From: Ascidiella aspersa | Lineage: Eukaryota | Assembly (NCBI GenBank): GCA_963924565.1 | Contig: OZ004607.1 | Span: 11,842,001 to 11,906,000 of the forward strand | Length of the DNA: 64,000 nucleotides | Reading direction: 5' to 3' | Part shown: positions 18,514 to 62,942 of the stretch, in pieces | How positions within the stretch are numbered: position 1 is the first letter of the stretch | Layout of the letters: every line of letters starts with the position of its first letter | Notes under the pieces: generated by a model | What the model was told of the DNA's origin: nothing | The model's input: the letters and a program-made list of their open reading frames with translations, nothing else | The model's database searches: none | Translations under genes and position numbers: made by a program

Positions 18514-18614
18514 TGCTAAAATGATGGCTACCATGTGGTGCTTTAAAGCTAATGGCACATCGACTTATTTGCGATGTCCCGACTCAGGCAACGTCCTTCT
18601 AAGCCTAGGTCATA

Positions 18615-28298: not shown

Positions 28299-28361
28299 TT
28301 GAGCAGTATTTTTTTAATAATTGTTTTTTTTTTATAATTTGTTAAATTTGTTGTTTTTTAC

Positions 28362-28367
28362 AATAAA
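28362..28367 (+). terminator. Candidate polyadenylation signal of C (40233-40238 for D)
   Basis: AATAAA about 63 nt after the stop codon. Confidence 0.45.
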
Positions 28368-29373
28368 TCAATTTCCGATGTTTAAATTTGGCGCTTGTCT
28401 ACATTTGAAATTTCTATAAAACATCGTAATTTTTTTAACAAAGCAAGAGAAAATAAAATGCCGCCACCAATCAACCGAATGGAGGTGATCTAGTAGGTAG
28501 GTCAATTTTCGTACTTTTGCTTACCTTTTAGGTTGACAGAGTGTTAAGAAAACATCCCTCGAGGTCGTTTTTCGTTTTTATAAAGTAATACGTATTCCAA
28601 ATGTTTCGTCCTTCATTACTTTTTTACTGGAGGTTCGAAAGGACAAAAAGTACAACTTTATGCATGACACCAAACGGTTACGCAAGTCAACCAATGTTTT
28701 GCGCTTCGCATAAACATCTGCTTATTAGCGACCACACCAAAACTTGCGATTCCTGTTTTCTTAACAACCATCGGTTTGCACACCAAAGATAACCTACACT
28801 CACAGTAGTGACTTAAAATTCAAAGCTGCCTGTTTAAATGCAAAAACAAGCAAGTTTGTAACCCAGAGAAAAGTACAAGAAATACCAATTTTAATTTTGA
28901 GGAATTATAGTATATTTGTTTTATAGAAGGGACAATAGATGGTGGAATAGTTATATGTAATTGCATATAATAAAAAACATTTAACAGAGTTCGCTATGTA
29001 AAAAACATTAAAAAAACTAAACAAAAATAACGAATATTTCAAAACATAAATAGCATTAAAATTAAATTAAACAAATCAGACGCATTCTTTAAGGAATTTT
29101 ACTATTAAACAATTATCTTATACACTGAAAAATATGTAATCTATTTACAGACCGCTAAAAGTGTACTTCTATCCGTACAATAATAGCATTTAGCTTACAG
29201 TATAATGTCATAATGTCACGACGAAAATACACGTGTTTTTGTTAAAACTCAAAGAAAAAGTTTCATCTTGATTAAAACATATACTTTTTTTTTAATACAA
29301 AAATATATTTTTTATACATTAAGAAATACTTTTATATATATATATAAATATCACATTGGCGGTTGGCCATTTC

Positions 29374-29489
29374 CTAAATAATATCGTCGTTTCTTGTGAA
29401 GATTAGAACAGCTGTGTTAAGGTCGTTGACAAATCTACCGTATTTAGGAAGTCTGTCGCTCAAAATGTGATCGTTTAAGCTGCTCCAAT
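29374..29489 (-). pseudogene. Orphan duplicate of the terminal coding exon of the intelectin-like gene
   Basis: Copy of 41244-41359 (WSSLNDHILSDRLPKYGRFVNDLNTAVLIFTRNDDII*) with its splice acceptor, carried inside the first unit of the tandem duplication. No upstream exons next to it. Confidence 0.85.
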
Positions 29490-30064
29490 CTAAATAGAGG
29501 CCGTATATTACCCTTAATTTAACAATGTTTGTTTGTCTTTTGCAATGTAAATATAGTTTATTGGTATTATGAACTTGTTATGTGTTCTAAGCATGCAGGA
29601 ATACGGAGATCGAGACAGACTTGGAACTATTATAGTCTTTAGTCTGTGCTACGCTCTTGTATCACCAAGTTGAGAACCGATAAGGCCGGGAACTGAAAAT
29701 CGTGAAAGTGAAGTAGCATATAGGTTGAAATATATGGTAATTTGATTTTTTTAAAAACGATTGCATTATATACACCCTATTTTGGTTACATGGATCGGTG
29801 AGATACTAGGCCGTGGAATTGTAGCCAGACCCGGAACATCGGAGTCCCATAATTTGGCAGGAGTATAGGACTCCACAATCGAATATTTTCGTGTTATCCA
29901 GAATTTCCAACACTTTCCCAGTTAAGAAGCCCTAATTACAAAAAATACAAGTTCTACCAACACGAAATAATATAGATATAAAATTAGCAAGAAAACACAA
30001 CTAGTTTGTTTAGATTGATGTGTTGTAAATGCCCACCGCCTACCGAAATGTTGTTGTGCTAAAA

Positions 30065-30386
30065 CAGGGGTTCTTAAACTTTTTTCACCGCGGACCCCCC
30101 ACATTATTTTTTGCTTCACGTGGACCCCTGTAGGCAAGAAATTATTAAAAATGACGTCTTAAATTGACGTCGCAATCAAATAGCCTGTCAGAAATGTGCT
30201 TATGATTTAAGTAAAAAGGAGTCTAACATCAGTGGTAAAACGTTTTATTTTTAATTAAACTCTTTTTTTTTTTAATTTGATAACTTTTTAAATGTACACT
30301 AATATTTTAATTTGGCCTTCATGGACCCCCTGAAATTAGTTCGCGGACCCCCAAGGGGTCCATGGACCCCAGTTTAAGAAACCCTG
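30065..30386. mobile_element. hAT-type MITE (duplicate of 18192-18513)
   Basis: Same TIR and TSD, inside duplication unit 2. Confidence 0.92.
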
Positions 30387-30487
30387 TGCTAAAATGATGG
30401 CTACCATGTGGTGCTTTAAAGCTAATGGCACATCGACTTATTTGCGATGTCCCGACTCAGGCAACGTCCTTCTAAGCCTAGGTCATA

Positions 30488-31043
30488 TAGTGGTTCTCAA
30501 AAATTGCTCGCAAAATAACACGTTGTTTTTACTCCTATCAATGGGACTGGTGCAAACTGCGACACAGTCTGCCTCTGCTTGGAGGGTAAAAAGCCGATCG
30601 TGATCGAAATCTTCACGGAAAACGTGAAACCTTTAACGAATCACTTAATTTGAGTGAAGCAATTACGAACTGTGACCTACAGCGCACAGTGACGCAGCAA
30701 CCTGTAAAAACGTAATTCTCATTAGCACAACGCAAGACTATGACGTCACAATGCACAATTCCACTCAGAGCATGCAATCATGTGAATGAACAACTAAACG
30801 CGTATAGGTCGATCCTGAGTTTGGCTATCTTTTTTTTGCCCACAATTAGGCATATGTACGAAATAGTTATTATTATTGTGTTTGCTAAGCTTGGTTTGGA
30901 AAAGTAATTTGCTCGAAAATTTTGTTGCACATTTTTTTTTTTTTTAGGAGCGTCGTGTTGATTTTTTGTTAGGTGCTTCGCGATCCCAGAAAATTGTCTC
31001 GCGGGTTCCAAAATGACCGCGGACCACAGTTTGAGAACCTCTG
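30488..31043. mobile_element. hAT-type MITE (duplicate of 18615-19171)
   Basis: Same sequence inside unit 2. Confidence 0.7.
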
Positions 31044-32169
31044 TTCTAGGAAAACCTTCCCCTAATTGTTTTATGACCTAACTTTGTGACACCATTCCTG
31101 AAATAAAATAAACCCTGGAGCCGCCCCTGGTCACAAAGCAGGTAGATCTAAGAAACCTGCTGTTTTTACTGCAAAATTGTGAAAATGAAATGGAGTCCAA
31201 ATACATTTAAGGAAACTTGTCAAAGCATTTTTTATTAAATTTTTTTCTAGTTAATTTACTTTTAAATTATACACCGAGGTAAACTAGGTCTACATCAACC
31301 ACAAAAAACTAGTCCTCGTCGTCGAACCCCAATAAGTAGGTCAAGCATATTAACCAATATCAAATGTATTTCTTGTTATGGTGTCTGTAGTATTTACTGG
31401 CAGGATACGTGACACACAGCGACGTATAGAACACAAGTAATGCCGCCCCAAGTACTGCAAGAGTGGCGGTTATATACAGGCACAGCAATACGTCATAAAG
31501 GTCGCACTCAACAATCCTATACAACACAGTATTATACAACAACTCTACAGTGTCAAAACCCTTTATCTCAGTATAAATAAAACTGCTGTAATCTGTGCCA
31601 ATAGTGAGGAGAACGGAGTCAGATTAAAACAGTAATTAGTAGGCTATTATTGAATGCCATAAAATTTGGACCTTGATCCTTTTGTGAGCGCTTGTGCATG
31701 ACATCATAGAAATACGTTTGCTCTAGCGTGGTGAAACATTGTGTTATTAAAGGTGAGAAACAAGAAAACACTGGTAAAGATGCTTAAACAGGTTTAATTG
31801 TGCAGTATGATTTATTTATGTGCATCTTTATAGTTATGTAGCTTAACAAGAAATACTGGCCTAATAGCTCATTTTTCCTCGGTTTAAATTGCGCAAAATC
31901 ATCGTATACTGTTATCACAGTCCGCAAACAACTCGAGCACCCGATTTATCTCGTGAGTCAACACACTTACGTCCTTTGCGACTGATTTAGCACTGTTTAA
32001 AGTTCAGTATATGCGTATCCATTTACTTTGTCAAGGCCTCAATATAACATAACTAAAGTTAGCTGCAAAGTGAACTCTCTGTACGTACTTCGTTTGTTAA
32101 AACTCTCTGTACTTCGTTTGTTGCTTATTTCAAAGGTTTGTACATCGTTTAAAAATAGCACAAACTCAA

Positions 32170-35100
32170 ATGCGTATTGCTTTTATTTTGATTTTGGGAC
32201 TTTTCCCGTTGTGCTTTGGCCAAAAGGGTCTGGTCAACTTTAACGCCTATAGACAAATCGGACTGAGCACTTACACCGATTTAAAGGAAGACTTGCACCC
32301 AAGAGCCAGTCGAGAAGATTTGGATGGGATCGTTGATTTTCTGAGCAAGTTCCACGGATCACAAAAATCAAGAAATGAAATTTTGCAGCACATTCAAGGG
32401 TTGGTTGTTTACGCTATAGTTCCGATTTATAAGAAACAGCAACCGTCCTTTTGTAATTATTAAACAGAATTATTAGATAGTGGGCCACTATTGGTCCCCT
32501 AAAGCAGGCACGTATAGTTTAACTAAGCAAAGGCAACGTTTTTTCACGCTCATCACGAACCTTATGTGGCTGTTTATATGTTTAGCCCATATTATGCAGA
32601 AATATTTTGGCCTTGAGCGCCGTTAGCACCATAAAACTCCCTAACAAAAATTTTTTAGCTAAACGGATGCAATTTGGCTTCCTTGGATCTTTGTTTACAA
32701 TTTTGACCCTAGTATTGACATATTGATTGTTGACGGCTATAAATATCTGCATCTTGTAACATATTATGATAAACAAATAACCAAGTTGACTACAGGTTAG
32801 GCACAAGACTGCAATCTCCCATGAAAGATTCCAAAGAGGTCGCAACCGAAGAAGAAATATGGAGTTGCTACACAAAATACCTGAAAATGATGATCGATTC
32901 TGCTAATGAAGTGCCATACGCCGTTCAAAGTAAGACCTGTGTGTTGCAAGTTGCAACTACCTAATTTAATATCTTGACATAAGTGCATCTTATAGTCACT
33001 GTTTTCAAATTGCATGATTTTTTTTAATTAAGTATTTTGGATAAAATGGTTTGACTCGACTTGGGTAGTTTAAACAAATGACTTGGACTTGGACTCAGAC
33101 TTCGCCAACTGGATTTGTTTCAGCTTTTTAAAATTAGGTTAGATTTAAAATTAGAGCATATCAGTTGTTGTTGCTGTAGTTGCTTCTGCATTAGTTCCAG
33201 ACCCTTCCTAACTATGAGTTTGACAGCGGTTCCTCGTTCAGTCGTTCCGCGATCCCATCCTTTTTGTCTGATGAGGGTTCAGGTATCCAAGGGTGGTAGG
33301 GTTAGCAGTTTGGTGGGGTTGGGGATGGAGTATCGCTGGGGGATAGCGAGGCGAAGGAAGAGGGGTTTGATTTTGGGGCAAGCTAATTCGGTGAGGGTGG
33401 GGTTATACTCGTTTATGATAGTCCAAGTTTGTTGATAATATGGCGACGGAAAAGCTGTATGGTGGAGAGTATTTTTAATACGGAAGTCATATTCAATGAT
33501 GGGCTTTGGGTGTCTGCGGGGAAAGTTATATTTAATGATGGGCTTTGTGTGTCTGCGGGGAAGTCCAGGTTACGTTGCTTAAGGTATAGGGGCCAATGAT
33601 AACGATGAGAAAAGAGATCGATGTAGAAGGGATGTTGACGACCGAGTAGCCCCCGTGGGGCGACTGGCCGCCAAGGGTTTCAAGGGGGGTGAGGGGGTTA
33701 TGGGGGCCGATAAACTATTTAAGTAATTTTAGTTTCATTTTTTTTCTTACCGGGTTTGGGAGAGAATAGACGGCAGCTAGTTGCGGAAAATAAAAAAAGA
33801 GTGGGCAAAAGTTAGGATGTGGGTAAGCCAGCGGTAGGCTATGGAATCAAACACTTCCCCGTCGCCAATTCGTCTGTTGTATTCGTAGAAGGTTTATTGC
33901 GCAAGGGCGTAGCAGTAAAGTAGTATAAAAGAACGATTTATTTAATATATAAAATTCTGTTGTTTGTCTTTACTGTTGCACGCAAAAAAGTTTGCTTGAT
34001 ACATTTTGCTGTTTTTTAATGGTTAAACATTTTAGTTTTTATGTAAATGACCTGACTTAAAGTGGACTTATTATGGCCTTGTTAAAACTTGGCTTAGCTC
34101 TCGACCATTAAAGCTTTTACTATTCGAAACTGAATAAATTGTGTTTGGTTGGATCTGTGGTAACTTATGGATAATTACTCGCAAAACGATACGGTAATAA
34201 TATAAAATGCTATCTTTGAATTGCTAAATCGAAAAAATTACATTATTTCTTTTAATTTTTAATATGTAATCAAAATTGAATTACGAGTAGACCTAACCGA
34301 AAGCAAAAGGGTTACTGAAATCCAGTAAAGATCAAAATCGTTTCTACACTCTTATCTACTTGTAACATTTTTCTAGGCACAGATTCATGGGGCAGTGTGG
34401 AGCCTGGTTGGCTGATAGGCAACGTTCGTTGGCCCGGACACTATTACGAATGCATTGATGTAAAGCCTGAAACCAACGATGATATGGACGGCAAATGGTG
34501 CAACTCTTACTGGGGATTTAAAGATATTGTAAGCGTAACTTAATCAGGGATGTATTTGCACTATCTGTGCGATGTTTCTATTTATCTGGAAACACTGACT
34601 GTTCAATGCAGATCATGATGATGATGGTTATCAAACAAATTGTTTTCCAAAATGTGGCTCGATTCTCCAAAAACAAGTTGTGCCGTGGCCCCAAATGTTT
34701 AAGAACCCAAATTTAGGAAGAAACAATGACGCTATACTCTTTTATTTCAATTTGCTACTGTCGTTTAATATTTTTTAGAATTACCCCTTGGGTTACCCAA
34801 TCGACATTAGCTTTGGCCTTTGCATGCCAAATGTCTGCACAAAGGAAGCTATAGAGGCCCTCTTGTGGATTTCCATAGCTGGGAACGACACGGGTGCAAG
34901 GTTGCCACTGCAGTCAGTCTACTGCCCGGAGCCTCGCAGCGCTTATCAGATGTCCACCGCTACTATAATCGCCATGTAAGTGTATGTGAAATATAACATG
35001 AATATTCAGGTTAGATTAACTGTTACATTGAATGTCCTGAAGCGCTTTTCTTCCGTCCTAAATCGCCAAACTAAACAGAATTTCGAATTGTTCAAATGCT

Positions 35101-38100
35101 AAATCGTTAAACGCTAAATCGATGTGAAGTAGATTAGTGAATTCAATAATAAGTTGCCCATACCGCAGAGTCGTTTCCACATTTATTGGCATTTTGTTGG
35201 TGTCTGGGACGATTTGTGACATTACATTGAGGAGGAACCAACAAACATGCGATTCTACAACTGGTAAATTGTGTTTCATGATTTCAACAAACCCACAAAA
35301 ACATAAGTTAAAGCAATATTTATTAATTTTGAAAAATACGTTTTCCGGCTTGTGGACAGCTAAAACCTAACAAAATGTGTTAAACAAAAACACGTTTTTG
35401 ACCTTTCTTCGTAACAAAAATTAATTGTACTGACACCAATCTATGGTAAATATTTAACTGTTGAAAAATACTGAATTTTTACAAATATAAATTTAGTGTT
35501 TTATAACCTAAAGCATAGATTCGTTGCTATTATTTTTTAGTGAAAGTGGCTTTATGTTTCTCGGTAATTTCAAATGGTGAAATAATTTTGGACCTCGACA
35601 AAAAACGTGGCGCAATCCCTGTGCTTGATGGAATTCGTTTTATTTCTACTACGTGGGTAATTCTTGGCCACTGTCTGATCTTCATGTTATATGGACTTGG
35701 TAATTAGACTGGTTGCTGTTTATAATTTGTTTAACTAAAAACATAATTGTGAAATCATTGTCGGCAGATAACGCAGGATATGCAGCTAGAGTAAGCCGAG
35801 AATCTTGGAGCCTTCTTCCTCTAATCAACGGGACGTTTTCGGTGGATACCTTTTACTTTCTTAGTGGCCTCCTGGTCGCTTACCTGGGTATCAAGCATTT
35901 AAACAAAACCAAAGGAAAAATTAATATACCGCTCATGTATTTACAACGGTATATGAGGTTGGTATGGCATCTATGTTAGGGCTATCAGATTACGTACGTT
36001 AAAAACGTTCGTTAAAATTAAGTAACGAAAATGGGAAAAAGACGAATGGTTTGTTAATTAGCTGTTAACAGTACTGATTGAGTCGGTTCTCAAAGATTGT
36101 AATGCACATAAAAGCACAGTTAATACCCTTAAAGATTCAATTTCTTTTCAACAGATTAACGCCTGCCTACGCCTATGCCATCTTGTTTTCCGTGGGGCTT
36201 TATAGGTATGTAGGACAAGGTCCCTTTTGGCAGGACATGGCCGAATTTCATGAGGAATCATGTCGGTATGACTGGTGGACCAATTTACTTTACATTACAA
36301 CCCTTTATCCTGCAACTCACGAGGTAGCCTACTTTAAGCTTATAGGAAATTTTTAATTATTTCCAGAACCTTTTTCTAAATAAAGAATTGCACCATGTAG
36401 GCCTAATGCAAACCATTTTTTCATACATTTCAATTTTCTAGTGCTTTGGAGTTGCGTGGTATCTCAGCAATGACATGATCTTTTACATTCTTTCTCCTTT
36501 CGTTCTACTTCTTCTGTACTAGTAAGTTAAATATTATAGGGTTGTAAATAACGCAGCCCATATATCGGCGTTGTCTATTTTAAAATGATAAGAATTCACT
36601 TAAGTTTTTCGGAAAAAAGACTTGATCTTCCCTAATTCATTTGGACAGATGGCATGACTTAGACGTCTTTTGCGAATTCTATATAGGCCTACTTGACTTA
36701 AAGTAAGGTGTTTGAATTTAATACATTTTAGTAAATTAGGATTAAATTTAACCATAAATTACTAATTGTTTCGGATTTGAATGTTTGCTTTGTGAAATGT
36801 TGCTCAGAATAGAACGCGTTTACCAATTTCATTAAATTCGTATTTAGCCTTATGCAAGTAGTTTGACATGGATTTAATTATCTTTCAAGCACCCTGTATG
36901 TTTTCATGCGAGAGAGGGCCAGTTGTTTTGCCCAACAAATCATTTCACATGTCTTGCTTTTTATTGAAATGTGTTTTTTAATTAAACTCTGTTTTAATGT
37001 TTAAATAGGTTTTCAACAAATGTACAAGCATTTTATTAGTAGTGTTTTTAAAGTGTTCAGTTTGTTTTCACTGAACTTTCTATAAGTGAAACCCATGGCA
37101 CGTGGTTGGTAAATCAATTTCAAAGTTATTTCGGTAGTTTTATTAAATAAGGTGTTCGTTATGTTTTTGCGTTAAATAAACCTAATATTATATTTACTAA
37201 CTCAATATGCAACGTCAACACACCTGTTATCTGTATTTCAATGGAACTCGATAAGTTTAGCGTAATTAGATTACATACTTTTCTGCAGTGCTTTCTACGT
37301 TGGACTTGGAATAATCTGTTTCCTTATAGTTGGTTGTCAAGTTGCGTTGGCCCTTCTTGCGTCACACAACAGCATTCAGCCCAATCCTATTGGCATAATG
37401 CAAACAATGACAGTGTAAGTCATTAGTGATTGACAAGTATGCAGGCTTGCACAGTTGCACACTATCATTTAGAGAGTTATAATTCTGGTAATTAATATTA
37501 TATGGCATTCATTATATGGCATTCACATTTGTCTTGCTGTGTAGGCTAGTTCGGGTGATTCTTACGTTAAAATTATAACCCTGCAACTTCACCTTCTGCT
37601 TAACTTGTAGCCCACCCTACAACTTTACCTTCTGCTTAACGTGGAATCACGCTTGTGTAGAATTGTTTTTTAAATCATGGAAGTATTTTTATCACCGTGG
37701 AATTTCGTTTAATACTTAGCTTTCATTTTATGTGTTTTTTTTTAGCTGGATTCGAATATTTTTACCCGAAGTCCCAGAAGAAAGACCTTTAAGCGAAATA
37801 TTCATGTACGATATGTACTTCCCGCCTTGGACGAGATATGCGATATATTTGATTGGGATGCTCACTGGTTATTTGCTTTATATGAAGAACGGAAAAGTTA
37901 AAATGAACAAGGTTAGATCCCTAAAGTCATTTGAAGGGTCAGTTTTAACCTATTAAAAGATGCGCTAAATGCTGATATAATTTCAAAGTAATGGAATATA
38001 AATTAAATTGGGTTATTTCAGCAGAAAAATCCAATCTATTAAAAATATGGTGGTGTGACAAAGTTATAATAGTTAATTTACATCAACCTTTAACAACCGT

Positions 38101-40169
38101 TGGGTTATTCGGGCACCAAACACAAATATGTTAGGGCAAATTTAAGGGCTCGAGGGGTATTCTATAAACAGGAAATATTTTTTTACGTTACGTAAAATAA
38201 AAAAACAAGCAGAAAATGTAACGGTGATAATTTGTGATATATAATAGGATACAGTTTTATTCTGTAGGTTTTTTAAAAGCTTCTAGTGGCCACATACAAT
38301 AGGAAGACATGAGTTTGCTTATTGTTCGTATACCGGTTTGAGGTATATGGTCTTTAACTTAACGCTGCAAATTTTTAGTTGATTGTTGCCGTCGGCTGGA
38401 TTCTCTCAACCGCGTTGGCCGCTGCGATAATCTACGGATTGCTCTACCATGTGCAGAACGTGGAACCCGTGAGTGACCAAATGACGGCTTTCTACCACGG
38501 TGCTTCGCGGCCTGTGTGGGCTATTTGCGTGGCTTGGGTTGTGGTCGCCTGCTCTTCAGGCTACGGAGGTATAGGCAAATGCTGCATTCCACAGTGTTGT
38601 AATATTGTTGTTGCGAGTAATAGGATTAATTAGGAAAATAAACAAAAAGTTAAAAGACAAAAATTTACAGTTAAAGAACAGAATAAAACTGATGGAAAAA
38701 ATATAAAAAAATGTCTTTTCATTTGCTACCAAGTTAATGATGTCGTTTAAGCTGATTTTGTTACATTTAGGTCCTATTACAAAGTTTCTCGATTGGAAGA
38801 TATTTACGCCCCTGAGCCGGCTGACATACAGCACTTATCTTTCCCACTTGATGATGCTGTACTACTACCTCGGGTCGCAGGAGAAACCCATCCACTTTCT
38901 CATGCTCAATATGGTGTATATATATTTAGGTACGTTAGAACCAGTTAATCACATATCTCTGTAGGTTAAACTTAGGAGACATTTATTTAACTAATAAATG
39001 TTACATCATCTTAGTTTAAAGACAATGACTTGACTCAAGTAGACACGGATTTACTTAAGCTTTTCGTTGTTGTGTTGTTTTGAACTGGGATTTCGACTAC
39101 TTTATTGTTAAAACTGAGACCTAAAAGTAAAAAAATCACCTGTTTTCAGTGACAAAATGCACCTGGATCTTTCCAACTGTCACTTCGACTTTTGGAGAAA
39201 AAAAATTTTCGTTATAATAACGCACCTTTGTAAATGCAAATATTATTATTATTATTTGTTCTACATTAATTTGTAACTAGTACCTCTAAACATCAGGAAG
39301 ATTTTCGCAAAAGTTTTTTTTGATGTCCATCCGCTTGATATGGGCCAACTGAATCACTTGTCTGATTACAAATATGTTTCGTTTTCTACAGCTACTACTG
39401 TACTTTCATTTGGAATCGGATTTCTGCTCGCGCTCGCTGTGGAGTGGCCAATGATCGGTCTGCTCAAACTTGCTTTTCCACCAAAACGAGCCACAACTCG
39501 ACCAATCAGCAACGAATTGAACATGGAAGCGATCAACGTGAGAGAAGATTTCACCGGGGATCATCACGATTTAAACAAAGGTGCCTATTTTGAGTTTTTT
39601 TTGTCCTTTTCTTAATTTGATTGCAGGTTAATTGTTTAAGACAGTGGTTCTCAACCGGGCTGCCGCGCACCTCAGGGTGCCATTTCTAATTCCCAAGGGT
39701 GCGAAAAGATATTTAAGAATCTGTGAGAATCTGATTTTTGCTTAACTCTTATAACTCTTTGTGTAAGATTAGAGTGGAATAAATCCAATTATAGCTTCCT
39801 ACGTTGTGTAGAGTTGATGTGTGTTGTTCCAAGTTTTATTATTTGTGAGGGGTGGCGCAAGCCATAAACCTCTGGTTTAAGGTGTTTCGAATGGTGTTAA
39901 ATGCTCAAATAATTTGTGGTCTTTGAATTTTGTCGACCGAAAATCGTAAACAGTTTATCAAGCGGGAAAACGCATGGTATTCAAAATAAGACTATTAACC
40001 CCAAACATATTATAATTTAATATTTTTTACAGTTGGGGCTCACAACAATGTGGGCTTTTTACCAGAAAACGGAGTGACCGTCCAGCACACCGATTTACCA
40101 AAAAGTGGCCCACCGTCTTATCACAGTGATGATGTTGCTGAACTGACAGAAAAAGTGCACAAGTTTTAA
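32170..40169 (+). CDS. nrf-6: NRF-6/OACYL-like paralog D, tandem duplicate of C (one V>M change), about 790 aa
   Basis: Exons 32170-32399, 32796-32929, 34377-34528, 34779-34975, 35169-35263, 35541-35699, 35768-35957, 36155-36323, 36442-36521, 37289-37414, 37746-37911, 38379-38568, 38771-38929, 39392-39580, 40033-40169. HLMVLYY in C is HLMMLYY in D. Confidence 0.9.
39642..39874. mobile_element. hAT-type MITE in intron 14 of D
   Basis: Duplicate of 27771-28003. Confidence 0.9.
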
Positions 40170-41243
40170 TTGAGCAGTATTTTTTTAATAATTGTTTTTT
40201 TTTTATAATTTGTTAAATTTGTTGTTTTTTACAATAAATCAATTTCCGATGTTTAAATTTGGCGCTTGTCTACATTTGAAATTTCTATAAAACATCGTAA
40301 TTTTTTTAACAAAGCAAGAGAAAATAAAATGCCGCCACCAATCAACCGAATGGAGGTGATCTAGTAGGTAGGTCAATTTTCGTACTTTTGCTTACCTTTT
40401 AGGTTGACAGAGTGTTAAGAAAACATCCCTCGAGGTCGTTTTTCGTTTTTATAAAGTAATACGTATTCCAAATGTTTCGTCCTTCATTACTTTTTTACTG
40501 GAGGTTCGAAAGGACAAAAAGTACAACTTTATGCATGACACCAAACGGTTACGCAAGTCAACCAATGTTTTGCGCTTCGCATAAACATCTGCTTATTAGC
40601 GACCACACCAAAACTTGCGATTCCTGTTTTCTTAACAACCATCGGTTTGCACACCAAAGATAACCTACACTCACAGTAGTGACTTAAAATTCAAAGCTGC
40701 CTGTTTAAATGCAAAAACAAGCAAGTTTGTAACCCAGAGAAAAGTACAAGAAATACCAATTTTAATTTTGAGGAATTATAGTATATTTGTTTTATAGAAG
40801 GGACAATAGATGGTGGAATAGTTATATGTAATTGCATATAATAAAAAACATTTAACAGAGTTCGCTATGTAAAAAACATTAAAAAAACTAAACAAAAATA
40901 ACGAATATTTCAAAACATAAATAGCATTAAAATTAAATTAAACAAATCAGACGCATTCTTTAAGGAATTTTACTATTAAACAATTATCTTATACACTGAA
41001 AAATATGTAATCTATTTACAGACCGCTAAAAGTGTACTTCTATCCGTACAATAATAGCATTTAGCTTACAGTATAATGTCATAATGTCACGACGAAAATA
41101 CACGTGTTTTTGTTAAAACTCAAAGAAAAAGTTTCATCTTGATTAAAACATATACTTTTTTTTAATACAAAAATATATTTTTTATACATTAAGAAATACT
41201 TTTATATATATATATAAATATCACATTGGCGGTTGGCCATTTC

Positions 41244-44200
41244 CTAAATAATATCGTCGTTTCTTGTGAAGATTAGAACAGCTGTGTTAAGGTCGTTGAC
41301 AAATCTACCGTATTTAGGAAGTCTGTCGCTCAAAATGTGATCGTTTAAGCTGCTCCAATCTAAATAGAGGCCGTATATTACCCTTAATTTAACAATGTTT
41401 GTTTGTCTTTTGCAATGTAAATATAGTTTATTGGTATTATGAACTTGTTATGTGTTCTAAGCATGCAGGAATACGGAGATCGAGACAGACTTGGAACTAT
41501 TATAGTCTTTAGTCTGTGCTACGCTCTTGTATCACCAAGTTGAGAACCGATAAGGCCGGGAACTGAAAATCGTGAAAGTGAAGTAGCATATAGGTTGAAA
41601 TATATGGTAATTTGATTTTTTTAAAAACGATTGCATTATATACACCCTATTTTGGTTACATGGATCGGTGAGATACTAGGCCGTGGAATTGTAGCCAGAC
41701 CCGGAACATCGGAGTCCCATAATTTGGCAGGAGTATAGGACTCCACAATCGGGAGTCGGATTCTAGTTTATTATTTCAAGTCGGACTCGGGTTGTTGTAA
41801 ACCGACTCCGAAGCCCTGGAATTAATAATGGTACTTACAAGAAAAATCACCACAGCGTTGATAGTCAAAATTTTGTAAGTTTGCAGATCCAATACAGAAT
41901 TTAGAAGGGTCGGCGGTGGAGTCAACTCTATCAAACATAAAAAAATAAAATTAGGAATAACTGATTATAGCCTAAGTATCTGGAACAAATTTATTTCTCA
42001 AACTTAAACTTGTAATTTTAAAAACATCAGCAGAACGCCAAAACTAAAACAAATGTATAACAAGTTAAAATATTTTCGATTAACTTTACAGGCGATTTAA
42101 ATAGAGGTTTAACCTACTTAACACCAGGACACATTGCGTATGGGTTTCCATTAGAGTCGTATGCTCTGAACTGAATGTAACCTGGAGTCACCCCGCTATT
42201 CTGGGAGTGTGAATCATTGCCTTTGGCTATGTTTACAGGGAAGACAAGCGGCTGTGGTTTGTGAAGAATACGAATGTCCGTGGTTGCTGAATTGACTACA
42301 ACATAACAATGAAAATCATAATGCGTTGGTGATCTGTCATTTTTATTTTAAATTTAAGATTAACAATGAATTTTAAAGCGAAAAAGGTCGCGTAAATCGA
42401 CATTATTGTGATTAGGACGTTTCAAAACCTATACTTGTATCATTCACTGATGATGATACACGCAGGTATCAAAAGGTCTTAATCAAGATGATGTTGATTT
42501 ACTCGATCTTTTTGACTTTAAAATTCATTATTAAGATTAACAAATGTTGATACTTTTTGTGATATGGGCCTATCGTATTTCTATCATTTTCTATAAGAAA
42601 TAAAGTACTTAGTTTTTAAACACTACAAAGAAAATTTTACCAATTGCATCCACAATTGCTTTTAAAACATTGTCCAAGTGGCTTGAGTCAAATGGGTTAG
42701 AGTCTTTCCTAAACACATTTAAAGACGTTATGGTTTAAACTTTAAAGTATACACAATGTAATAAATCCGAATACTTGGCAAGTAGAAAGTATCCAAAAAG
42801 AGTGTTCTTTGTTTCCCTATTAAGCACCATTTCATTCGTCAGATTTGCTGAACTGTAAGTGGGGTAGGCAGAAAAACTATTCGAATATGAATTTAAAACC
42901 TAAGAAAAAAACAATAGGTTAGGTAATATAAACTATACCACGTTTTCGGTTACAATGTGTTAACATTTTTTGGCAAAAGCTGAAAGCAATTTATTTTGTC
43001 GGTCAATATAACGACAAATTATAACAAGAGTAGTCCATATGTTCTCTATTTTAAATGTACCTTTTTCGACCAAATTTGAAAGAATACTTGAGCAACGGAA
43101 GGAATGGACGCTCCCCTATTGTAAACTTGATGTCCTCTTGCTTGGTAAAACATTTCTTTGTATAAAAACGTATTGACGTATAAACTACCATGAGAACCGC
43201 CACTTGGAGATAATATTGATTCAGCCTAAATGATAGTGAGAGCATTTGTACAATTTTATATTCTAACAAAATCAATATACGCGGCAAAAATCAGTGTGCG
43301 GTAATTATCATACTTTCATTTTGAAAGAAGTTGATGCTCCATCAATTGCGTTGAACGAAAGAAGAGTTATGAATGGTTGAATAGCTGCACTACTTATATG
43401 ATAGGTCAAAGAATCTCTAAGATAAATAATGAATAGTTATATTATTTTGTTATATGTTATAAATACATATATATATTTTATATTAATTATTGCCAAAAAA
43501 CAACAACAAATGCTTCCAAACGTAATGACATTTACCTATTTCGTATGTCGTTTGCCAGAAAGTATGTTTATTGTAGTAGAGGGTGAAGTTTTATGAAAGC
43601 TATTTAACAATTGCATTTGACTTACGTATAACTCTTTCCATATGAAATCAAATTGTAAGGCTTTCCGTTTGCACTGAACGACACCTGAAAAATAGTATTG
43701 CATTAAACATTAATGAACGAAATCAATCTTTGGATTACTTTGGTAAATAAGCGATGCATTAAAATACATAAAAGTGTAAGTCAGTCACATGCCTTATTTC
43801 CGCCTTTAAAAAGGTTGCTTCCATTATAGATGAGAGTCGCATTTAACCCAGCGTCATAGTCGTATGTACTCCAATTGGGCACAAGCGAGGTTATTGAGAG
43901 ATTCTTTTGAAACTCAAGCAGTATTGTTTTGTCAACACCTTGATGGAAAATAAGTTATATGGAACGTCGAACTAACTTTGAATGATTTTAAGCCTTTGCT
44001 AGTTCTACTTTAATTTCAACTGTATTAGCCATACCAACTGTATTTAGCTGTAAAAAAAATTGCAGGGTTTTTTTATTGTTGGCTAAGTAAAGCATGCAAA
44101 GTTACATTACAGAGTCAACTGACCTACAATGCTAAGGCCACGAAGCGGTGCGTAAAAATAGAACAACGCTGACAATGTCGATCCGTATTCTTTCAGAAAT

Positions 44201-47200
44201 TTGCTTGAGGTGTAATATTGTTGCCTTGTGGTTGAGCTCAGATAATCGATAGGGACCGAGTTTGGAACATGAGAAACCATGATATCTGTTGCCTAAAAAC
44301 AGTTTTATTGTATCTTCAGAGCAAAAGAGCCTTGATGCTACAGCATATTGTGGTAATTTCCACCAACTGTGCCAACTTCAAATAAACGATAACAAAACTA
44401 TATTTGTACAAGCAAAGCAAAACTATTCGTACAATGGTAGCGTTTAACACTTGGGCAACAATGCGAGCTTAGGTCTAGGTAAATTGTTTTATAGTAGAAA
44501 ATATGTCTTTTACCTACAATTGTACGTGGAGTTACTGACATTTGTGCAGTAACTTTTAGAAATACCTTTAAACTGCTATAAGCTGAGTTTTTATAATCCA
44601 AAGATGTTGCGCTGCGAGCGTTTCCGAAGGTGCTGGTGCTTTCCCAATTAGAAGAACCTTTTCATGCCAAGAACACCATTAACCTAATGAGCTATTGCAC
44701 ATGTACATCAGCATACCTACAGTTCACCACTAAATATAACGAGTTTAATTATAAACAGAAAAGTACACATGACATTTTATGCTTTAAATCATTAAGTTGA
44801 TATGGAAATTTACTGCACCACCTCTTCTATTGAAGCGTGCAGCCTGGCTGTATGGATTCCGTGACCAGTTGTCATAAATCGTTGAACATTTCTGTCCAGG
44901 AGCCTCGTTCACTATAGATGCTACTAATGTCCAGCCTCCCCCTGCTGTTTTCATGTCACAGTAAACCTGAAGTACAGTACAGGTCAACTACCCAAACAAA
45001 CTCTAGGAAGAATTAAGGATTACTGTAGGATTTTTTTAGATTGGTGAATAATTTAACGATTTTATCTATTCAAACAGCTAGATGGTATTACTTTATGAAG
45101 AAAACAAATGTAACAAAAAATTCAAGGAAAAAAGCTTATCAGATTGAAACCTCCGAATTTTTTTAGCTATATTTTTTAACATTAAAACGCTGTGAAAGAT
45201 TTGCAAAAAATACATAAAATAAATGCAAAGCTCTGTTTAAATTCCATTTCAACGTAAAGCTAAATCATATTTTAATTTTCAAATCAGGCAAACCATTTTT
45301 ATACCGTTTGAAAGCTATTATACCCACTTGAATGTGACATACTTTGGAAGCATGGGTATTTTTGTTTAAATAAATTTCACCATGATATATCCTGTAAAAA
45401 ATCTGTTTCTTTGTAAGCTGATTCAAATGCACGCGTTTGCTAAATTTTATGAGTATATATAGACGAATACATTTGAAACCGAGAACATTTTATGGTTATC
45501 CTAGGCATCACATGGCTACGGTATACTGATTTAAAAGAAACCCATACGCACTTCGATTCCATCAGATCCTGCAGACAAATTAATCTTGTAGATTCCAGAT
45601 TCGTTAAAGCCGCTTTTTTTCAATTCCAAGCATGATTTGTAGTTGATAACTGTTAGCAATAGGTGAATGTATGGTTAGAGCAGTGATTTTCCACCGGTGT
45701 TCCGCGGAACACCAGTGTTTCGTGCAAAATTATTAGGTGTTCCGCAAAACATGATCACTGGAAAAAATCAATGGATTAAAGTAGCTTTTATATTCTGTAA
45801 TTGATTGTGATTTGTTTAATTTATTATTATGTACGGTATTACGACTTGTGTACAGGAGAGGAATTCTGTGGGCCTGTTGCTGTTTTACAATAATACGACC
45901 GAATATCAGTTATGTGCTCATTCAAACAGATCCAAATGTCGCACAACGACAAATTAAAAGTGAATACATTGTTGTTTTAATGCAATATTCCCTATAAACC
46001 TTTATTTGGTGTTCTGCAAATTTCTTTTAAAGCATACGGTTAAGTGTTACGTGGCATAAAAAGGTTGAAAAACACTGACTTAGAGTACATTAACTCTAAA
46101 ATGATGCGCCTAAGAAATTCTCAAGTGTGACTATAACGCATTTTTGTAACAACATATTATGAGATAAATTTAATGTCTGTTTGGCCCTGCACGGAAAAAA
46201 CACAAAAGGGTACTTGATAGAAGCAACGTAAAAGAATCATCAGTGTTTTATATCAAACAAAATATTAGAGTAAAAAAAAATTCACATATGACCTGCAGGT
46301 TCTTAAGTGTCATAGTTTATGTTGTGATTTTTCCTTTTTTTTAGTTTTCGAAAAGCTGACCATAATATTCTCTGTTGTTTTTATAAACAAAATACATTTG
46401 AATTCCATTGCCGGCCAACCCGTCGATCGTGAGCCGTATGCAGCTCATTTACAGTTTTTCTCGGCACTTACGTTTCCATTTGTAGGGTTTTTTAGGATGT
46501 AAAGTGTCGATTTTGTTTGCTTAAGTTACCGATTCATCGCCGGTTCCGACTCAGATTCAGTGGTCGGCAAACTGTAGACCGGGGCTCTAATGTGGGCCGC
46601 AGAGCCATTTTTAGTGGGCCGCGAGGTACTTTTGAATAGTATTGTTATCATGTAGTTGTGGGCCGCATGATAGCCGTGTAGATTAATTGCAAAAAATTGA
46701 AAAAAATTATATATTCTACGTTTTATAGTATGTTTTACAATTTTACATTATGGCATGGCAGTGTTCAAGACGCCGTGTAATATTTCACCTTTAAATCAAA
46801 TATCCTGAATACGTTCCTGTTGTCATGGTGGTTTTACGTAGTGGACCTTCAATAGCTCTGAAAAGAGTACTTTGGGCCGTGACAAAAAAATTTTGCCGAC
46901 CACTGTTTTAAATGCTTTGACAACGTTATGACTGTTTTATTCTATGGTGTGGTAAGGAATTCGCGTTTATAAGTTGCCTATACTCAAATTGTTACGGTAG
47001 AACATTTGCAATAAATCAAGTTGAGCAAAGGTACATATATAAGTGAAGTAGAATCGGGGTGAGGCTCATTTCTGCTCATATATAAAGTGAGGATATTCAA
47101 GGTTAAAAAAGTAAGAAATGCGGCTTTTGGTATTTGAATGGTTGGAAATGTCTTTCTTACATTAACAAATACCAGCGAAGGTAATATTTACTTTACGCCG

Positions 47201-49625
47201 TAAATAAATTACAAAGTAGATATATAATTTAGCAATTCGTCTAACAATTGCAACAAACAATTTCAATAATTATTACTTACCTGAATCACTTCCGGAAGGG
47301 GCTACACCAACAGATAAAACAGCATTCGTTTCCTGTACGTAAAGCCATTTGAATTATGGGGTCGAAATTAAAAATCCTATTGATTTTTAATAAACTTTTA
47401 TTTGAAGTATCTCAATATATATAATACAAAAAAACATTACAAACAAAGGTTGTTTCATTGAAACAAGAGCTGCGTTATCAACAGTCAGTAAAGTAGTCCT
47501 AGCGTTTGCATCGGCGTACCTTTGTCTAACATCGGTTAAAACAGGGGTCGGCAACCTTTTTCCAGTCGCGGGCCAAAACCAAACTCAGAAAGATCTCTGC
47601 GGGCCGCTCATAATGATAACTAAGAATTGTGTTATTTTCATGTTAAAACAACTGTGAACCAGCCGGGCCTCGGATCGTAACAACATTTAAGAAGGCTGTA
47701 AAGTGCAAAGAGCGAAAAAAATCGTTTGTTTGGTTTGAAATTCGAGTTCACACGTCGTCATCCATACCACTAACGAAAAGTAATAAAAGTACTTTGAGCG
47801 AACACGCAAACATTTAAAATTAACCTAGCTCAGTGTTGGCACACCTGGCGAGTGAAGCGAGCGCGATTTTTTTGGTATACCTGCATTTCTATTAAATTTC
47901 TTGCAAGTTTTTATTACATTGCCGAAAATAAAAAAAAATGTTAAAAATACACGTCCAACATTTTGAATACGTTTTCCGTGACGCACTTCGCTACCTTCCT
48001 AGGCGCAACGGTAAAGAAAATTTTCGCACTTACGTAGTTAAAATAGTCAAAAAGTATGTAAAACGGACTCGTGTCCAAATTATCAAAGAGGCGGCGGGCC
48101 GGATGAATTACATCGGCGGGCCCGATCGGGCCGTAGGTTGCCGACCCCTGGGTTAAAACAAAAAAACTAAGATAGGTTTTTGTGCACATCGTTAACCGTT
48201 ACTCATATAGTAAAATTAAACACTTAACAAATATAAGGTTAAACTACATGCTGTATGACATTACACAAATGATGTATATAACGGTTTCAAGCGGAAAATA
48301 GCCTAATGGAAAATAGCCTAATGATCATTAACTCAATCCTTTTCTAACGAAGTACGTTTTTTATCTTATATGTGGGCTGTATAGTAAGTCGTCGCAGGCC
48401 AGTGGTTCTTAACCGCGCCCATTTTGGGATTATAATTGCAACTTTTGGGGTGCTACGTTAGTCAGAACAATATGGTAGTTGTCATATGCAGTTGTGCGCA
48501 TGGGATGGACACAAGAGTAAGTTGTGCACATGCGATCTAACATGTGCAATTGGGTCGGACAACACTCCTACACATACAGCCGTGTACCAACTCTGTTTTT
48601 GCCAACCTTCACATTGAAACTGCGCAATTTTTTTTTAGTTATGTTGTTTCCTGTTTTAGTGACATTTTTAGCGCAAAGTCCTTTTGTGTACCATTGCATA
48701 TTTTCTGTCTATTAGTAATAGATTATAACGAACAACATTTTGGTGTTGGTTCGAAATGCTTTGCCAATTCGACCTTTTGGGTATGATATGCGCTTTGCGC
48801 AATGATATGCGTTTTAACATCAATCAAATACTTTTTAATACTTGATGGGCCGATTAACTTAGGATTACCTTTCTGAAAACACTATACACTAAGATCGAAA
48901 GGTATTAACTTTATCGTAATCGGTAACCTACCGTGTAGTTTAGGACAGAGGCGACCGCGATGACAAGAAGCAGTATTGTTGCGAATCCGAGCAGAAGTAT
49001 CACAATGAGGCCAGATTTTGACTGACTATCTGATTGTGATGCAAATATTTATATTAAGAGTATAACAAGTTACTATATGTCTTATTTAACAGAGTGCATC
49101 TTTTTGGTGCGACAAGACTCAACGACGGCCTAATTTAACTTGGTATACTGCACTATAAAGAAACCCCTTCTACATAAGTCTTTATAGCTTGTTAAAAGTT
49201 GAAGTCACATAGGAAATATGCATTGAAATTTCAACATTTTGCCAAAATCGCTCGACCAAGTTAATTATCGTTATTTTCAAGTATAATATATTTGCTTCAT
49301 TTATTTACTTTTAATGTTTCCCAATTTTTTTTAAGAAATTTACTATTCATTATTTAGTTTACCTACTTGTAAATCATTCCTATATTTTAAAATTCGCATA
49401 TGTATACAGGATGTCAATCTCAATCGTTTATTGGGACGTGGGAAGGAATCGTTTATCTAAGAATAAAATCGAACCTTGGCTGGGTTTTACATCTTCCTTG
49501 TTGGTTTCAACTGGGCTAGTTTTTGTCATCTGAGGCTCCTCGTAGATCGCGCTGCTTTCTTCGAACTGGGGTTTGGCCTTGCTGGAACCGTTTTGATTTA
49601 CATAGTTGTTGTCGGGACGAGACAT
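41244..49625 (-). CDS. ITLN-like: Type II transmembrane intelectin-like (fibrinogen-related lectin) protein with internal insert, 16 exons, about 617 aa
   Basis: Exons 49625-49475, 49029-48932, 47332-47281, 45649-45552, 44966-44822, 44657-44566, 44292-44124, 43938-43793, 43684-43626, 43416-43314, 43225-43061, 42899-42775, 42708-42641, 42295-42118, 41927-41839, 41359-41244 sum to 1854 nt in one frame. Intelectin motifs in order: SCLELK..GIYKI, VYCDMKTAGGGWTLVAS, NWESTSTFG..SATSLDYKN, HVPN, PGYIQFR..AMCPG, CIG, RCGDFS.W, AVLIFTR. Transmembrane segment GLIVILLLGFATILLLVIAVASVL. Confidence 0.88.
41678..41818. mobile_element. GGAGTCGG-type MITE remnant cut by the duplication breakpoint
   Basis: Ends ACCGACTCCGAAGCCCTG. 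Only its left half is present at about 29808-29880. Left boundary approximate. Confidence 0.55.
42365..42529. repeat. Imperfect foldback element with a decayed hammerhead-like core (possibly Penelope-derived)
   Basis: Arms start AATGAATTTTAAAG and end CTTTAAAATTCATT and pair along most of their length. CTGATGA-T-GATAC-ACGCAG-GTATC-AAAA at 42447-42474. Confidence 0.7.
45681..46077. mobile_element. hAT-type MITE
   Basis: TIR CAGTGATTTTCCACC / GGTTGAAAAACACTG; decayed TSD GGTTAGAG/ACTTAGAG. Confidence 0.8.
46558..46905. mobile_element. hAT-type MITE
   Basis: Perfect TIR CAGTGGTCGGCAAA and subterminal GGGCCGC repeats. Confidence 0.85.
47542..48150. mobile_element. hAT-type MITE, family 2
   Basis: Perfect TIR CAGGGGTCGGCAACC and perfect TSD GGTTAAAA. 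A truncated relative is at 61789-62042. Confidence 0.93.
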
Positions 49626-53648: not shown

Positions 53649-61046
<7,398 letters not shown>

Positions 61047-62042: not shown

Positions 62043-62942
62043 TAGGGTTCCTCTTTTTCCCGGATTTTTTCACTCCCGGGAAACGGGATTGTAATAGTTC
62101 CATTAGAGTTTCGCCGACAGATTTTTGAAAATTTTCATTCGCTTTCTCATGAAGGCCCAAAGGAAATGCGCCAACTATAGTTTCAGAACGTTTTGTTTGG
62201 CCACGTATGGCGAAATATATAGTTTATTGGTGCAATATATGCATATCGTGTCAAAGAGCAAAGGTGACTCGTCACAACATTACACTGAACAACATTTAGC
62301 ACAAAATCCAAGTGGAATAAAATAGTCCCTAATTTTTACTCAATGCAAAGTGAATCGAAAACTTGGATTTTGGTTCATTATGCAGTTTATTTGCAAGCCA
62401 CAGCCCAGGAACTCAAGACCTGACAAGCATCATGATGACACTAAGTGAAGCAAAGTGGACTCATGATAAGTTATATCATTATTTGGAATCAAACTTGGAT
62501 CCGGTAACTACAGCCGACATGAACTTTGTGACTTCAACTGTAGAAAAAGCGAAATCAAAAAAGTAATGTAGGACGAAACATTTAGAATAAGTATTACATT
62601 AAAACAAACGAAAAATGGCACCGAGGGATGTATTCTTAACACTCTGTCCAACCTAAAGGGCAAGGAAAAGTTTGTTTTATTTATAGATGGAAAGGGTAGC
62701 GAACTGAATTGTTTGGCATTCCCTTCTCTTAAGAACGAAAAGTAGGCCAACCTACTAGATCACCTCCATAAGGTTAATTCATGGCAGCATTTTATTTTCG
62801 TTTTCTTTGTTAAAAAAATTACGATGTTTTAATGAAATTAAAATGTAGACAAGCGCCAAATTTAAACACTGAAAAATGATTTGAAAAACAACAAATTTAA
62901 ACAAATTACGAAAAAGAACAAAAAATTAAAAATAGTTCTCGA

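What the first reader, a model, noticed from the sequence alone, without database searches (positions are those of the whole stretch)
41244..49625. Membrane-anchored intelectin with a tyrosine-motif cytoplasmic tail: a candidate lectin signalling receptor
Seen: exon 1 encodes a hydrophilic 50-aa N-terminus with no signal peptide, containing DNNYVN and AIYEEP. Exon 2 encodes a 24-residue hydrophobic helix, exon 3 a short stalk, and then the intelectin domain follows, all in phase. Known: vertebrate intelectins (ITLN1, XEEL) carry a cleaved signal peptide and no cytoplasmic tail; pY-x-N is the Grb2 SH2 consensus and pY-D/E-x-P resembles Nck-type SH2 sites. Inference: a type II pattern-recognition receptor built like a Dectin-style C-type lectin but on the intelectin fold. 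The ORF track hides it almost completely.
Basis: partly seen in the sequence, partly recalled or inferred. Interest (0 to 1): 0.85.

Follow-up and report, generated by a model that had tools for sequence, protein, structure and literature searches.

The report
Membrane-anchored intelectin with tyrosine tail
This is a real-looking 16-exon gene for an intelectin-type sugar-binding protein that, unlike the secreted intelectins known so far, is tied to the cell membrane by an N-terminal anchor and has a short tyrosine-bearing tail inside the cell; this build is shared by several sister genes, but whether it is expressed and whether it signals are both unproven.

Summary
On the minus strand, 49625-41244, I rebuilt a 16-exon open model of 614 aa (617 with another acceptor). 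All intron phases fit, and 15 of 16 introns are GT-AG.

- **Gene layout:** exon 1 is a hydrophilic 50-aa start with YVN and YEEP. Exon 2 is a 24-25 residue hydrophobic helix followed by an N-glycosylation site. Exon 3 is a 17-aa stalk. Intelectin exons follow.
- **Support for a type II membrane anchor:** four sister loci on another chromosome keep the same tail exon, helix exon, stalk exon and phases. A more distant sister keeps the helix exon. Tail dN/dS is 0.2-0.5.
- **Tyrosines:** Tyr8 and Tyr28 are kept in all five tails. The Grb2-type YxN sits at a different tyrosine in the sisters, and no ITAM, ITIM, hemITAM or endocytic motif is present.
- **Expression:** no reads fell on any exon in the one RNA run available.
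- **Signalling:** this remains inference only.
a 222-aa, six-exon module of unknown fold splits the lectin domain. One donor is GC. The last exon lies inside an 11.9-kb near-identical tandem duplication.

The closest known analogue is FIBCD1. I class this as a new variant of a known kind. The scan noted the insert earlier in a sister gene.

The parts
49475..49625 (-). Exon 1: start codon and a 50-aa hydrophilic cytoplasmic tail; the donor leaves 1 base
   Evidence: Homologous exons sit at four C3 loci with the same MSR start and the same donor phase. dN/dS is 0.2-0.5.
49596..49613 (-). Tail residues 5-10 around Tyr8 (YVN, a YxN pattern)
   Evidence: Tyr is kept in 5 of 5 tails; Asn at +2 is not kept.
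49533..49550 (-). Tail residues 26-31 around Tyr28 (YEEP, a YxxP pattern)
   Evidence: Tyr is kept in 5 of 5 tails; Pro at +3 is kept in 4 of 5.
48932..49029 (-). Exon 2: juxtamembrane Lys, hydrophobic helix, NYT sequon
   Evidence: Homologous helix exons sit at C3 (three loci) and C6, all starting with AT after a 1-base overhang.
48941..49012 (-). Predicted signal-anchor / transmembrane helix (24 residues)
   Evidence: The KD19 mean is 3.29 and the uncharged run is 25 residues. It is too long and too far from the N-terminus for a cleaved signal peptide (inference from general rules).
47281..47332 (-). Exon 3: 17-aa Ser/Thr/Gly-rich stalk, phase 0 in and 1 out
   Evidence: It is the best splice-scored in-phase candidate, with consensus sites. 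The C3 sisters have a 55-nt exon of the same phase and composition with a kept NxT sequon. Sequence similarity to the window exon is weak.
45552..45649 (-). Exon 4: start of the intelectin domain
44822..44966 (-). Exon 5: fibrinogen-like core motif of intelectins
   Evidence: PDB intelectin-1 at E 3.6e-6. Pfam Fibrinogen_C at 18.5 bits, below the cut-off of 22.
44566..44657 (-). Exon 6
44124..44292 (-). Exon 7: last intelectin exon before the insert; phase 1 out
42641..43938 (-). Exons 8-13 (43938-43793, 43684-43626, 43416-43314, 43225-43061, 42899-42775, 42708-42641): a 222-aa cysteine-free module of unknown fold inserted in the lectin domain and flanked by phase-1 introns; the exon 8 donor is GC
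   Evidence: No Pfam or PDB match was found exon by exon or with a 9-sequence profile of exon 8. The module is also present in five more distant intelectin-like loci.
42118..42286 (-). Exon 14: the intelectin domain resumes (an alternative acceptor at 42295 gives 617 aa)
   Evidence: XEEL at E 0.07.
41839..41927 (-). Exon 15: the region that forms the ligand and calcium site in human intelectin-1; strongly diverged here
41244..41359 (-). Exon 16 and the TAG stop; it lies inside the second copy of an 11.9-kb tandem duplication

Best explanation
This is a protein-coding gene of a small lineage-specific family, in what looks like an ascidian genome. It encodes a type II membrane protein. The N-terminal 57 residues stay in the cytosol. 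One signal-anchor helix spans the membrane. A short glycosylated stalk then carries an intelectin-type lectin head, itself split by a 222-aa extra module, on the cell surface.

Shown by sequence and comparison: the exon chain, the helix, the absence of a signal peptide, and conservation of tail, helix and stalk exons in sister genes.

Inferred: the head binds a glycan, whose specificity cannot be predicted because the known ligand-site region is diverged. The two conserved tail tyrosines would be phosphorylated on ligand-driven clustering and recruit SH2 adaptors of the YxN / YxxP-reading kind, coupling binding to uptake or a cytoskeletal or immune response. I put the membrane-receptor architecture at about 0.75. 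I put the phosphotyrosine-signalling step at about 0.3.
For: The 16-exon model is open, in phase, and has AG acceptors throughout. Several exons match intelectins. The helix exon has KD19 3.29 and a 25-residue uncharged run. The tail, helix and stalk exons recur in the same order and phases at C3 2.60-2.67 Mb, and the helix exon recurs at C6 10.33 Mb. Apart from shared repeat elements, the introns between the window and C3 genes cannot be aligned. Synonymous sites are saturated (pS about 0.72) while pN is 0.43, giving dN/dS 0.2-0.5. Tyr8 and Tyr28 and their neighbours are the conserved blocks of the tail, and every tail has one YxN. The sisters have a strongly basic flank before the helix and NxT sequons after it. 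All sequons and cysteines lie on the luminal side.
Against: No RNA read fell on exons 1-7 in the one RNA run of the species; about 6% of that run was read and the tissue is unknown. The exon 8 donor is GC, whereas all sisters have GT, so splicing could be impaired. The window gene's own flank before the helix is only weakly basic. The YxN motif is not at the same tyrosine in the sisters, and YxxP is lost in one. No classical immune-receptor or endocytic motif is present. The candidate exon 1 of the C6 sister has no tyrosine. No orthologue from another species could be examined. The ligand-site region is not recognisably conserved.
Confidence: 0.6

Rival explanations
1. It has the same membrane-anchored architecture but works as an endocytic or scavenger receptor, or simply as a tethered lectin that may be shed by cleavage in the stalk. 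The tail would serve sorting or have no signalling role, as with FIBCD1.
For: FIBCD1 is a type II endocytic receptor with a fibrinogen-related head (PMC9994688 and PMC9449597). The short Ser/Thr-rich stalk could be a shedding site. The motif classes in the tail are not strictly conserved. The candidate C6 tail lacks tyrosines.
Against: No YxxPhi, NPxY or di-leucine sorting motif is present in any of the five tails. The tyrosine-centred blocks are the best conserved parts of the tail.
Confidence: 0.25
2. The window copy is a silent or decaying member of the family: structurally intact in its reading frame but no longer properly spliced or expressed.
For: There were zero RNA reads on its exons. 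It has a GC instead of GT donor at exon 8, and the next usable GT would shift the frame. It is the lone copy on C1, while the family cluster is on C3.
Against: All 16 exons are open and in phase after a divergence that saturated synonymous sites. AAG|GCATGT is a plausible GC-AG donor (general knowledge). One RNA sample of unknown tissue is weak negative evidence.
Confidence: 0.1
3. Exons 1-3 are not part of the intelectin gene. They would be chance ORFs or belong to another transcript, and the real protein would start with an undetected signal-peptide exon.
For: There is no transcript evidence. Exon 3 shows only weak sequence similarity to the sisters' stalk exon.
Against: The same three exons, in the same order, spacing and phases, precede the intelectin exons at four other loci. 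The helix exon does so at a fifth. Exon 4 needs a 1-base overhang, which exon 3 supplies. No alternative signal-peptide exon was seen.
Confidence: 0.05

Closest known systems
Intelectins / X-type lectins (human ITLN1, Xenopus XEEL and XCGL-1, ascidian and lamprey plasma lectins)
   Same: The head shows collinear similarity to intelectin chains over exons 5-7 and 14-15. This includes the fibrinogen-like core motif and the intelectin-specific C-terminal half.
   Different: Intelectins are described as secreted calcium-dependent lectins (PMC9441953; PMC6321704). This protein has no signal peptide and instead has a cytoplasmic tail and a signal anchor. A 222-aa module is inserted in the domain. 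The residues around the ITLN1 ligand and calcium site are not recognisably kept (residue positions recalled from memory; alignment).
FIBCD1 (fibrinogen C domain-containing 1)
   Same: It is a type II transmembrane protein with a short cytoplasmic tail and a C-terminal glycan-binding head of the fibrinogen-related fold superfamily. It acts as a surface receptor for microbial and matrix glycans (PMC9994688, PMC9449597, PMC10825690).
   Different: FIBCD1 has a canonical fibrinogen C domain, a coiled-coil and a polycationic stalk (the stalk details are from my own knowledge). Here the head is intelectin-type, with Pfam Fibrinogen_C below its cut-off. The stalk is about 20 residues with no coiled coil. 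The tails are unrelated.
Type II C-type lectin-like receptors (Dectin-1, CLEC-2, DC-SIGN class)
   Same: They share the topology and logic: an N-terminal cytoplasmic tail with tyrosine motifs, a signal anchor, a stalk and a C-terminal lectin head.
   Different: The fold is different (no C-type lectin domain). No hemITAM, ITAM or ITIM is present, and no YxxPhi or di-leucine internalisation motif.

Membership tests
Intelectin (X-type lectin) | Fibrinogen-like N-terminal segment with the conserved Cys-Asp-Met ... Gly-Gly-Gly-Trp core | tested here: met
   Exon 5 versus PDB intelectin-1 / XEEL, E 3.6e-6 to 1.3e-5. Pfam Fibrinogen_C gives a partial hit of 18.5 bits.
Intelectin (X-type lectin) | Intelectin-specific C-terminal half, collinear with the N-terminal part | tested here: met
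   A fish intelectin aligns in order to exons 5, 6, 7, 14 and 15. Exon 14 versus XEEL residues 202-230 gives E 0.07.
Intelectin (X-type lectin) | Secreted, with a cleaved N-terminal signal peptide | tested here: not met
   The first 57 residues are hydrophilic. The only hydrophobic segment is a 24-25 residue helix in exon 2. The secreted nature of the family is from PMC9441953.
Intelectin (X-type lectin) | Ligand-binding calcium site and aromatic box of human ITLN1 (Asn260, Glu262, His263, Glu274, Trp288, Tyr297; positions recalled from memory) | tested here: inconclusive
   Exons 15 and 16 alone give no significant PDB intelectin hit. In the weak alignment only the Cys-Ile-Gly and Cys-Gly-Asp-Phe anchors and a Trp are kept.
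Intelectin (X-type lectin) | Uninterrupted lectin domain of about 270-280 aa | tested here: not met
   A 222-aa six-exon module lies between exons 7 and 14.
Dectin-style type II C-type lectin signalling receptors | C-type lectin-like domain | tested here: not met
   No Pfam C-type lectin hit on any exon. The head is intelectin-type.
Dectin-style type II C-type lectin signalling receptors | hemITAM, ITAM or ITIM in the tail | tested here: not met
   A pattern scan of five tails found none.
Dectin-style type II C-type lectin signalling receptors | Type II topology (N-terminus in the cytosol) | tested here: inconclusive
   The sequence rules fit: an internal anchor, a basic flank in the sisters, and sequons and cysteines after the helix. 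No topology predictor or experiment was available.
FIBCD1-type receptors | Canonical fibrinogen C domain reaching the Pfam threshold | tested here: not met
   18.5 bits against a cut-off of 22, and only 17 residues matched.
FIBCD1-type receptors | Coiled-coil / polycationic stalk for tetramerisation | tested here: not met
   The stalk is one 17-aa Ser/Thr/Gly-rich exon.
SH2-docking tails (Grb2 YxN; Crk/Nck/Abl YxxP) | Motif present and positionally conserved in relatives | tested here: inconclusive
   YxN is present in 5 of 5 tails but at Tyr8 in the window gene and at Tyr20-22 in the sisters. YxxP at Tyr28 is present in 4 of 5. The sister tails are not independent of each other.
SH2-docking tails (Grb2 YxN; Crk/Nck/Abl YxxP) | Tyrosines phosphorylated and bound by SH2 domains | not testable with these tools
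   This needs phosphoproteomics or a pull-down.

The most novel reading that the evidence does not exclude
This would be a chordate-invertebrate family of signalling pattern-recognition receptors built on the intelectin fold. The proteins would be type II membrane lectins whose conserved tail tyrosines dock SH2 adaptors. Their lectin head would have acquired, by exon shuffling between two phase-1 introns, a 222-aa domain of a fold not yet described. That would make an independent invention of the 'Dectin-like' receptor logic.
Probability: 0.2. Interest if true: 0.75.

Novelty: new variant of a known kind. Interest (0 to 1): 0.55.

Why it matters
Intelectins are treated in the literature as secreted lectins from placozoans to humans. 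A conserved membrane-anchored branch with a tyrosine-bearing tail would show that this fold, like the C-type lectin and fibrinogen-related folds, was recruited as a cell-surface receptor. That would give a tractable entry into how filter-feeding invertebrate chordates sense microbial glycans. The unexplained 222-aa module inside the lectin head is a second, separate puzzle shared by at least ten genes of this genome.

Tried and rejected
- **RNA evidence:** the only RNA run of the species label (X4) put reads only on repeat elements in intron 2 (46.5-46.9 kb) and intron 2 (47.5-48.3 kb), and none on exons. This is uninformative rather than negative.
- **Whole-library protein search with exon 5:** it returned mostly giant multi-domain proteins sharing only the fibrinogen-like core, plus two fish intelectin fragments. 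No relative with a membrane anchor was found.
- **Word-indexed search with the tail exon:** no candidate was found.
- **The 222-aa insert:** I ran Pfam on ten exons, PDB searches with exons 8, 15 and 16, a 9-sequence profile of exon 8 against PDB, and an ESM Atlas look-up of exon 8 (best score 0.89 with few shared features, so treated as chance). None identified the insert.
- **Translated comparison of intron 2 with the sisters:** it did not detect exon 3. Exon 3 was found by splice-site scoring instead.
- **Direct exon 2 to exon 4 splice:** a weak alternative donor 5 nt downstream would be in phase in the window gene. It is impossible in the sisters, where all exon 2 donors are phase 0. Rejected.
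- **4-nt micro-exon at 48872-48869:** rejected as inferior to exon 3.
- **Exon 1 of the C6 sister:** only a tyrosine-free 27-aa candidate was found. Unverified.
- **Literature searches for a transmembrane intelectin:** nothing was found.
Full report
**Setting.** The window is AT-rich animal DNA (GC about 0.36). It comes from a 308-Mb assembly of 75 contigs and lies at C1:11,842,001-11,906,000. Earlier first-stage notes on other pieces of this genome call it ascidian-like. I did not test that. It fits the small AT-rich genome and the reported expansion of intelectins in tunicates (PMC6321704).

**Checking the observation.** All the relevant open segments are on the minus strand.
- Exon 1 begins at the ATG at 49625, which follows an in-frame stop, and runs to a GT donor after 49475. 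It gives 50 codons plus one base. It is hydrophilic throughout. Tyr8 sits in a YVN context and Tyr28 in a YEEP context.
- Exon 2 (49029-48932) starts with two bases that complete an Asp codon. It encodes a Lys-containing flank, a 24-25 residue hydrophobic stretch (Kyte-Doolittle 19-residue mean 3.29) and an NYT sequon, and ends in phase 0.
- Exon 4, the first intelectin exon, needs one base from the preceding exon. In the 3.3-kb gap the best in-phase exon by splice-site score is 47332-47281. It is 52 nt long, has a CAG|G acceptor and a CAG|GTAAGT donor, and encodes 17 Ser/Thr/Gly-rich residues.
- Chaining all exons gives 16 exons, 1842 nt and 614 codons, with no stop in any exon body or junction codon and a TAG at 41246-41244.

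**Is it an intelectin?**
- Exon 5 matches human intelectin-1, a lamprey serum lectin and Xenopus XEEL chains at E 3.6e-6 to 1.3e-5.
- A fish intelectin recovered from the whole-library search aligns in order to exons 5, 6, 7, 14 and 15.
- Exon 14 matches XEEL 202-230.
- Pfam sees only a sub-threshold Fibrinogen_C fragment, which is what intelectins usually give.

Two departures appeared. First, between exons 7 and 14 lie six further exons (43938-42641; 666 nt, 222 aa, no cysteine, five N-glycosylation sequons) flanked by phase-1 introns. By length-matched comparison with vertebrate intelectins they sit in a loop of the domain, so they are an insertion. Second, the part corresponding to the ligand and calcium site of human ITLN1 is so diverged that exons 15 and 16 alone find no intelectin. 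Glycan specificity therefore cannot be inferred.

**Are exons 1-3 real coding exons of this gene?** This is the crux, and RNA gave no answer. The one RNA run carrying the species label put 201 reads on the 6-kb stretch. All were on multi-copy repeat elements at 46.5-46.9 and 47.5-48.3 kb, and none were on exons 1-7 (about 6% of the run was read and the tissue is unknown). I therefore turned to comparison within the genome.
- The exon 5 query finds three close sisters on C3 at 2.60-2.67 Mb, plus more distant loci.
- The tail exon finds weak hits 5-10 kb upstream of those same sisters.
- After fetching 84 kb, translated comparison showed every exon of the window gene at the sisters. It also showed tail exons at 2,673,393, 2,635,909, 2,633,544 and 2,612,780, and helix exons at 2,671,920, 2,632,768 and 2,611,569.
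- All tail exons begin with the same three residues and end with a one-base overhang. All helix exons start with AT, giving Asp, and end in phase 0.
- A 55-nt stalk exon of the right phases, with a kept NxT sequon, follows in all four C3 units.
- A still more distant sister on C6 (35-60% identical in the lectin exons) has a homologous helix exon 320 nt upstream of its exon 4, again starting with AT.

Apart from shared repeat elements, only exons align between the window gene and the C3 genes. Synonymous sites are saturated (pS about 0.72) while non-synonymous differences are 0.43, giving dN/dS of 0.22-0.34 for the tail. Among the C3 copies the value is 0.26-0.73. These results make a chance ORF or a foreign exon very unlikely.

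**Topology.** The helix starts at residue 57 and is 24-25 residues long. That is too far from the N-terminus and too long for a cleaved signal peptide by the usual rules, so it should act as a signal anchor. In the sisters the flank before the helix is strongly basic; in the window gene it is only weakly so. All ten sequons and all six cysteines lie after the helix, and an intelectin head needs the oxidising, calcium-rich lumen. Type II orientation is therefore the only sensible reading. It remains a prediction, because I could not run a topology predictor on the joined model.

**The tail.** Aligning the five tails shows two conserved blocks, each centred on a tyrosine; the rest is free to vary.
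- Tyr8 and Tyr28 are kept in all five.
YVN in the window gene corresponds to YSPN, YIPN or YTLK.
- The sisters instead have YEN or YNN at a third tyrosine, where the window gene has Phe.
- YEEP corresponds to YEMP in three sisters and YDMS in one.
- Every tail thus has one YxN and most have a YxxP. However, the C3 tails share ancestry, so this amounts to about two independent observations.
- No ITAM, hemITAM, ITIM, YxxPhi, NPxY, di-leucine or PPxY motif occurs.
- A candidate tail exon for the C6 sister has no tyrosine at all (unverified).

The data fit functional tyrosine-based linear motifs. They do not show which reader domain, if any, binds them.

**Caveats on integrity.** The exon 8 donor is AAG|GCATGT in the window gene, where all three sisters have GT. 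A GC donor with this context can work (general knowledge). If it did not, the next GT would shift the frame. In addition, an 11,874-bp tandem duplication at 99.93% identity (18008-29881 and 29881-41751) ends inside intron 15. Exon 16 therefore has an identical second copy about 11.9 kb downstream. This does not alter the model, but it may be a very recent event or an assembly artefact.

**Comparison with what is known.** Reviews and primary papers describe intelectins as secreted, soluble, calcium-dependent lectins. Four literature searches found no transmembrane intelectin. The logic of tail, anchor, stalk and lectin head is that of type II C-type lectin receptors. The nearest structural analogue is FIBCD1, a tetrameric type II endocytic receptor with a fibrinogen-related head. 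The gene fails the membership tests for both: it has no C-type lectin domain, no hemITAM, no canonical fibrinogen C domain and no coiled-coil stalk. It also departs from intelectins in secretion mode and domain continuity. I therefore file it as a new variant of a known kind: an intelectin-headed type II membrane receptor.

**What I left out.** Every search used single exons by reference.

**Verdict.** The membrane-anchored architecture is well supported by family comparison. Signalling is plausible but unproven, and expression is unknown. Interest is moderate to fairly high for lectin and invertebrate-immunity specialists.

Noticed in passing
window 42641-43938 (-): A 222-aa, six-exon, cysteine-free module flanked by phase-1 introns is inserted in a loop of the intelectin domain. 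It is present in all four close sisters and in at least five more distant intelectin-like loci (C3 26.22, 26.23, 31.73 and 31.78 Mb; C6 10.32 Mb). It has a conserved Pro-Asn-Trp ... Tyr-Asp ... Gly-Gly ... Gly-Asn-Lys pattern in its first exon. No Pfam, PDB or Atlas match was found.
   Followed up: partly
window 18008-29881 and 29881-41751: An 11,874-bp direct tandem duplication at 99.93% identity. Each unit carries a plus-strand multi-exon gene resembling the nose-resistant-to-fluoxetine / acyltransferase-3 family. The right end falls in intron 15 of the intelectin gene, so exon 16 is present twice (second copy near 29373-29486). It may be a recent duplication or an assembly artefact.
   Followed up: partly
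window 43791-43793 (-): There is a GC instead of GT donor at exon 8 in the window gene only. The three C3 sisters have GT at the same place.
   Followed up: yes
window 46500-46900 and 47500-48300: Multi-copy repeat elements lie in the intron between exons 2 and 4, with DNA word depth up to 10^5. They are related to copies at C3 2.660-2.661, 2.672 and 2.649 Mb. They drew the only RNA reads of the stretch, on both strands.
   Followed up: no
C3:2,633,380-2,638,850 (L037): Upstream of sister copy 2, the tail exon is present four times. Two copies are intact and 92% identical. Two further copies keep the first 11 residues and then diverge. These may be alternative first exons or decaying duplicates.
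   Followed up: no
C3:2,603,000-2,612,800 (L038, L039): In sister copy 3 the stalk exon and exon 4 occur twice (2,609,955/2,608,939 and 2,604,179/2,603,057). This is an internal duplication that would stay in frame if both pairs were spliced in.
   Followed up: no
window 5000-15600 (+), 62700-64000 (-): Further copies of the same acyltransferase-3 / NRF-like gene family flank the duplication, so the intelectin gene sits inside a tandem array of that family. A prostaglandin-reductase-like exon lies at 54059-54460 (-) and 56921-57274 (-).
   Followed up: no
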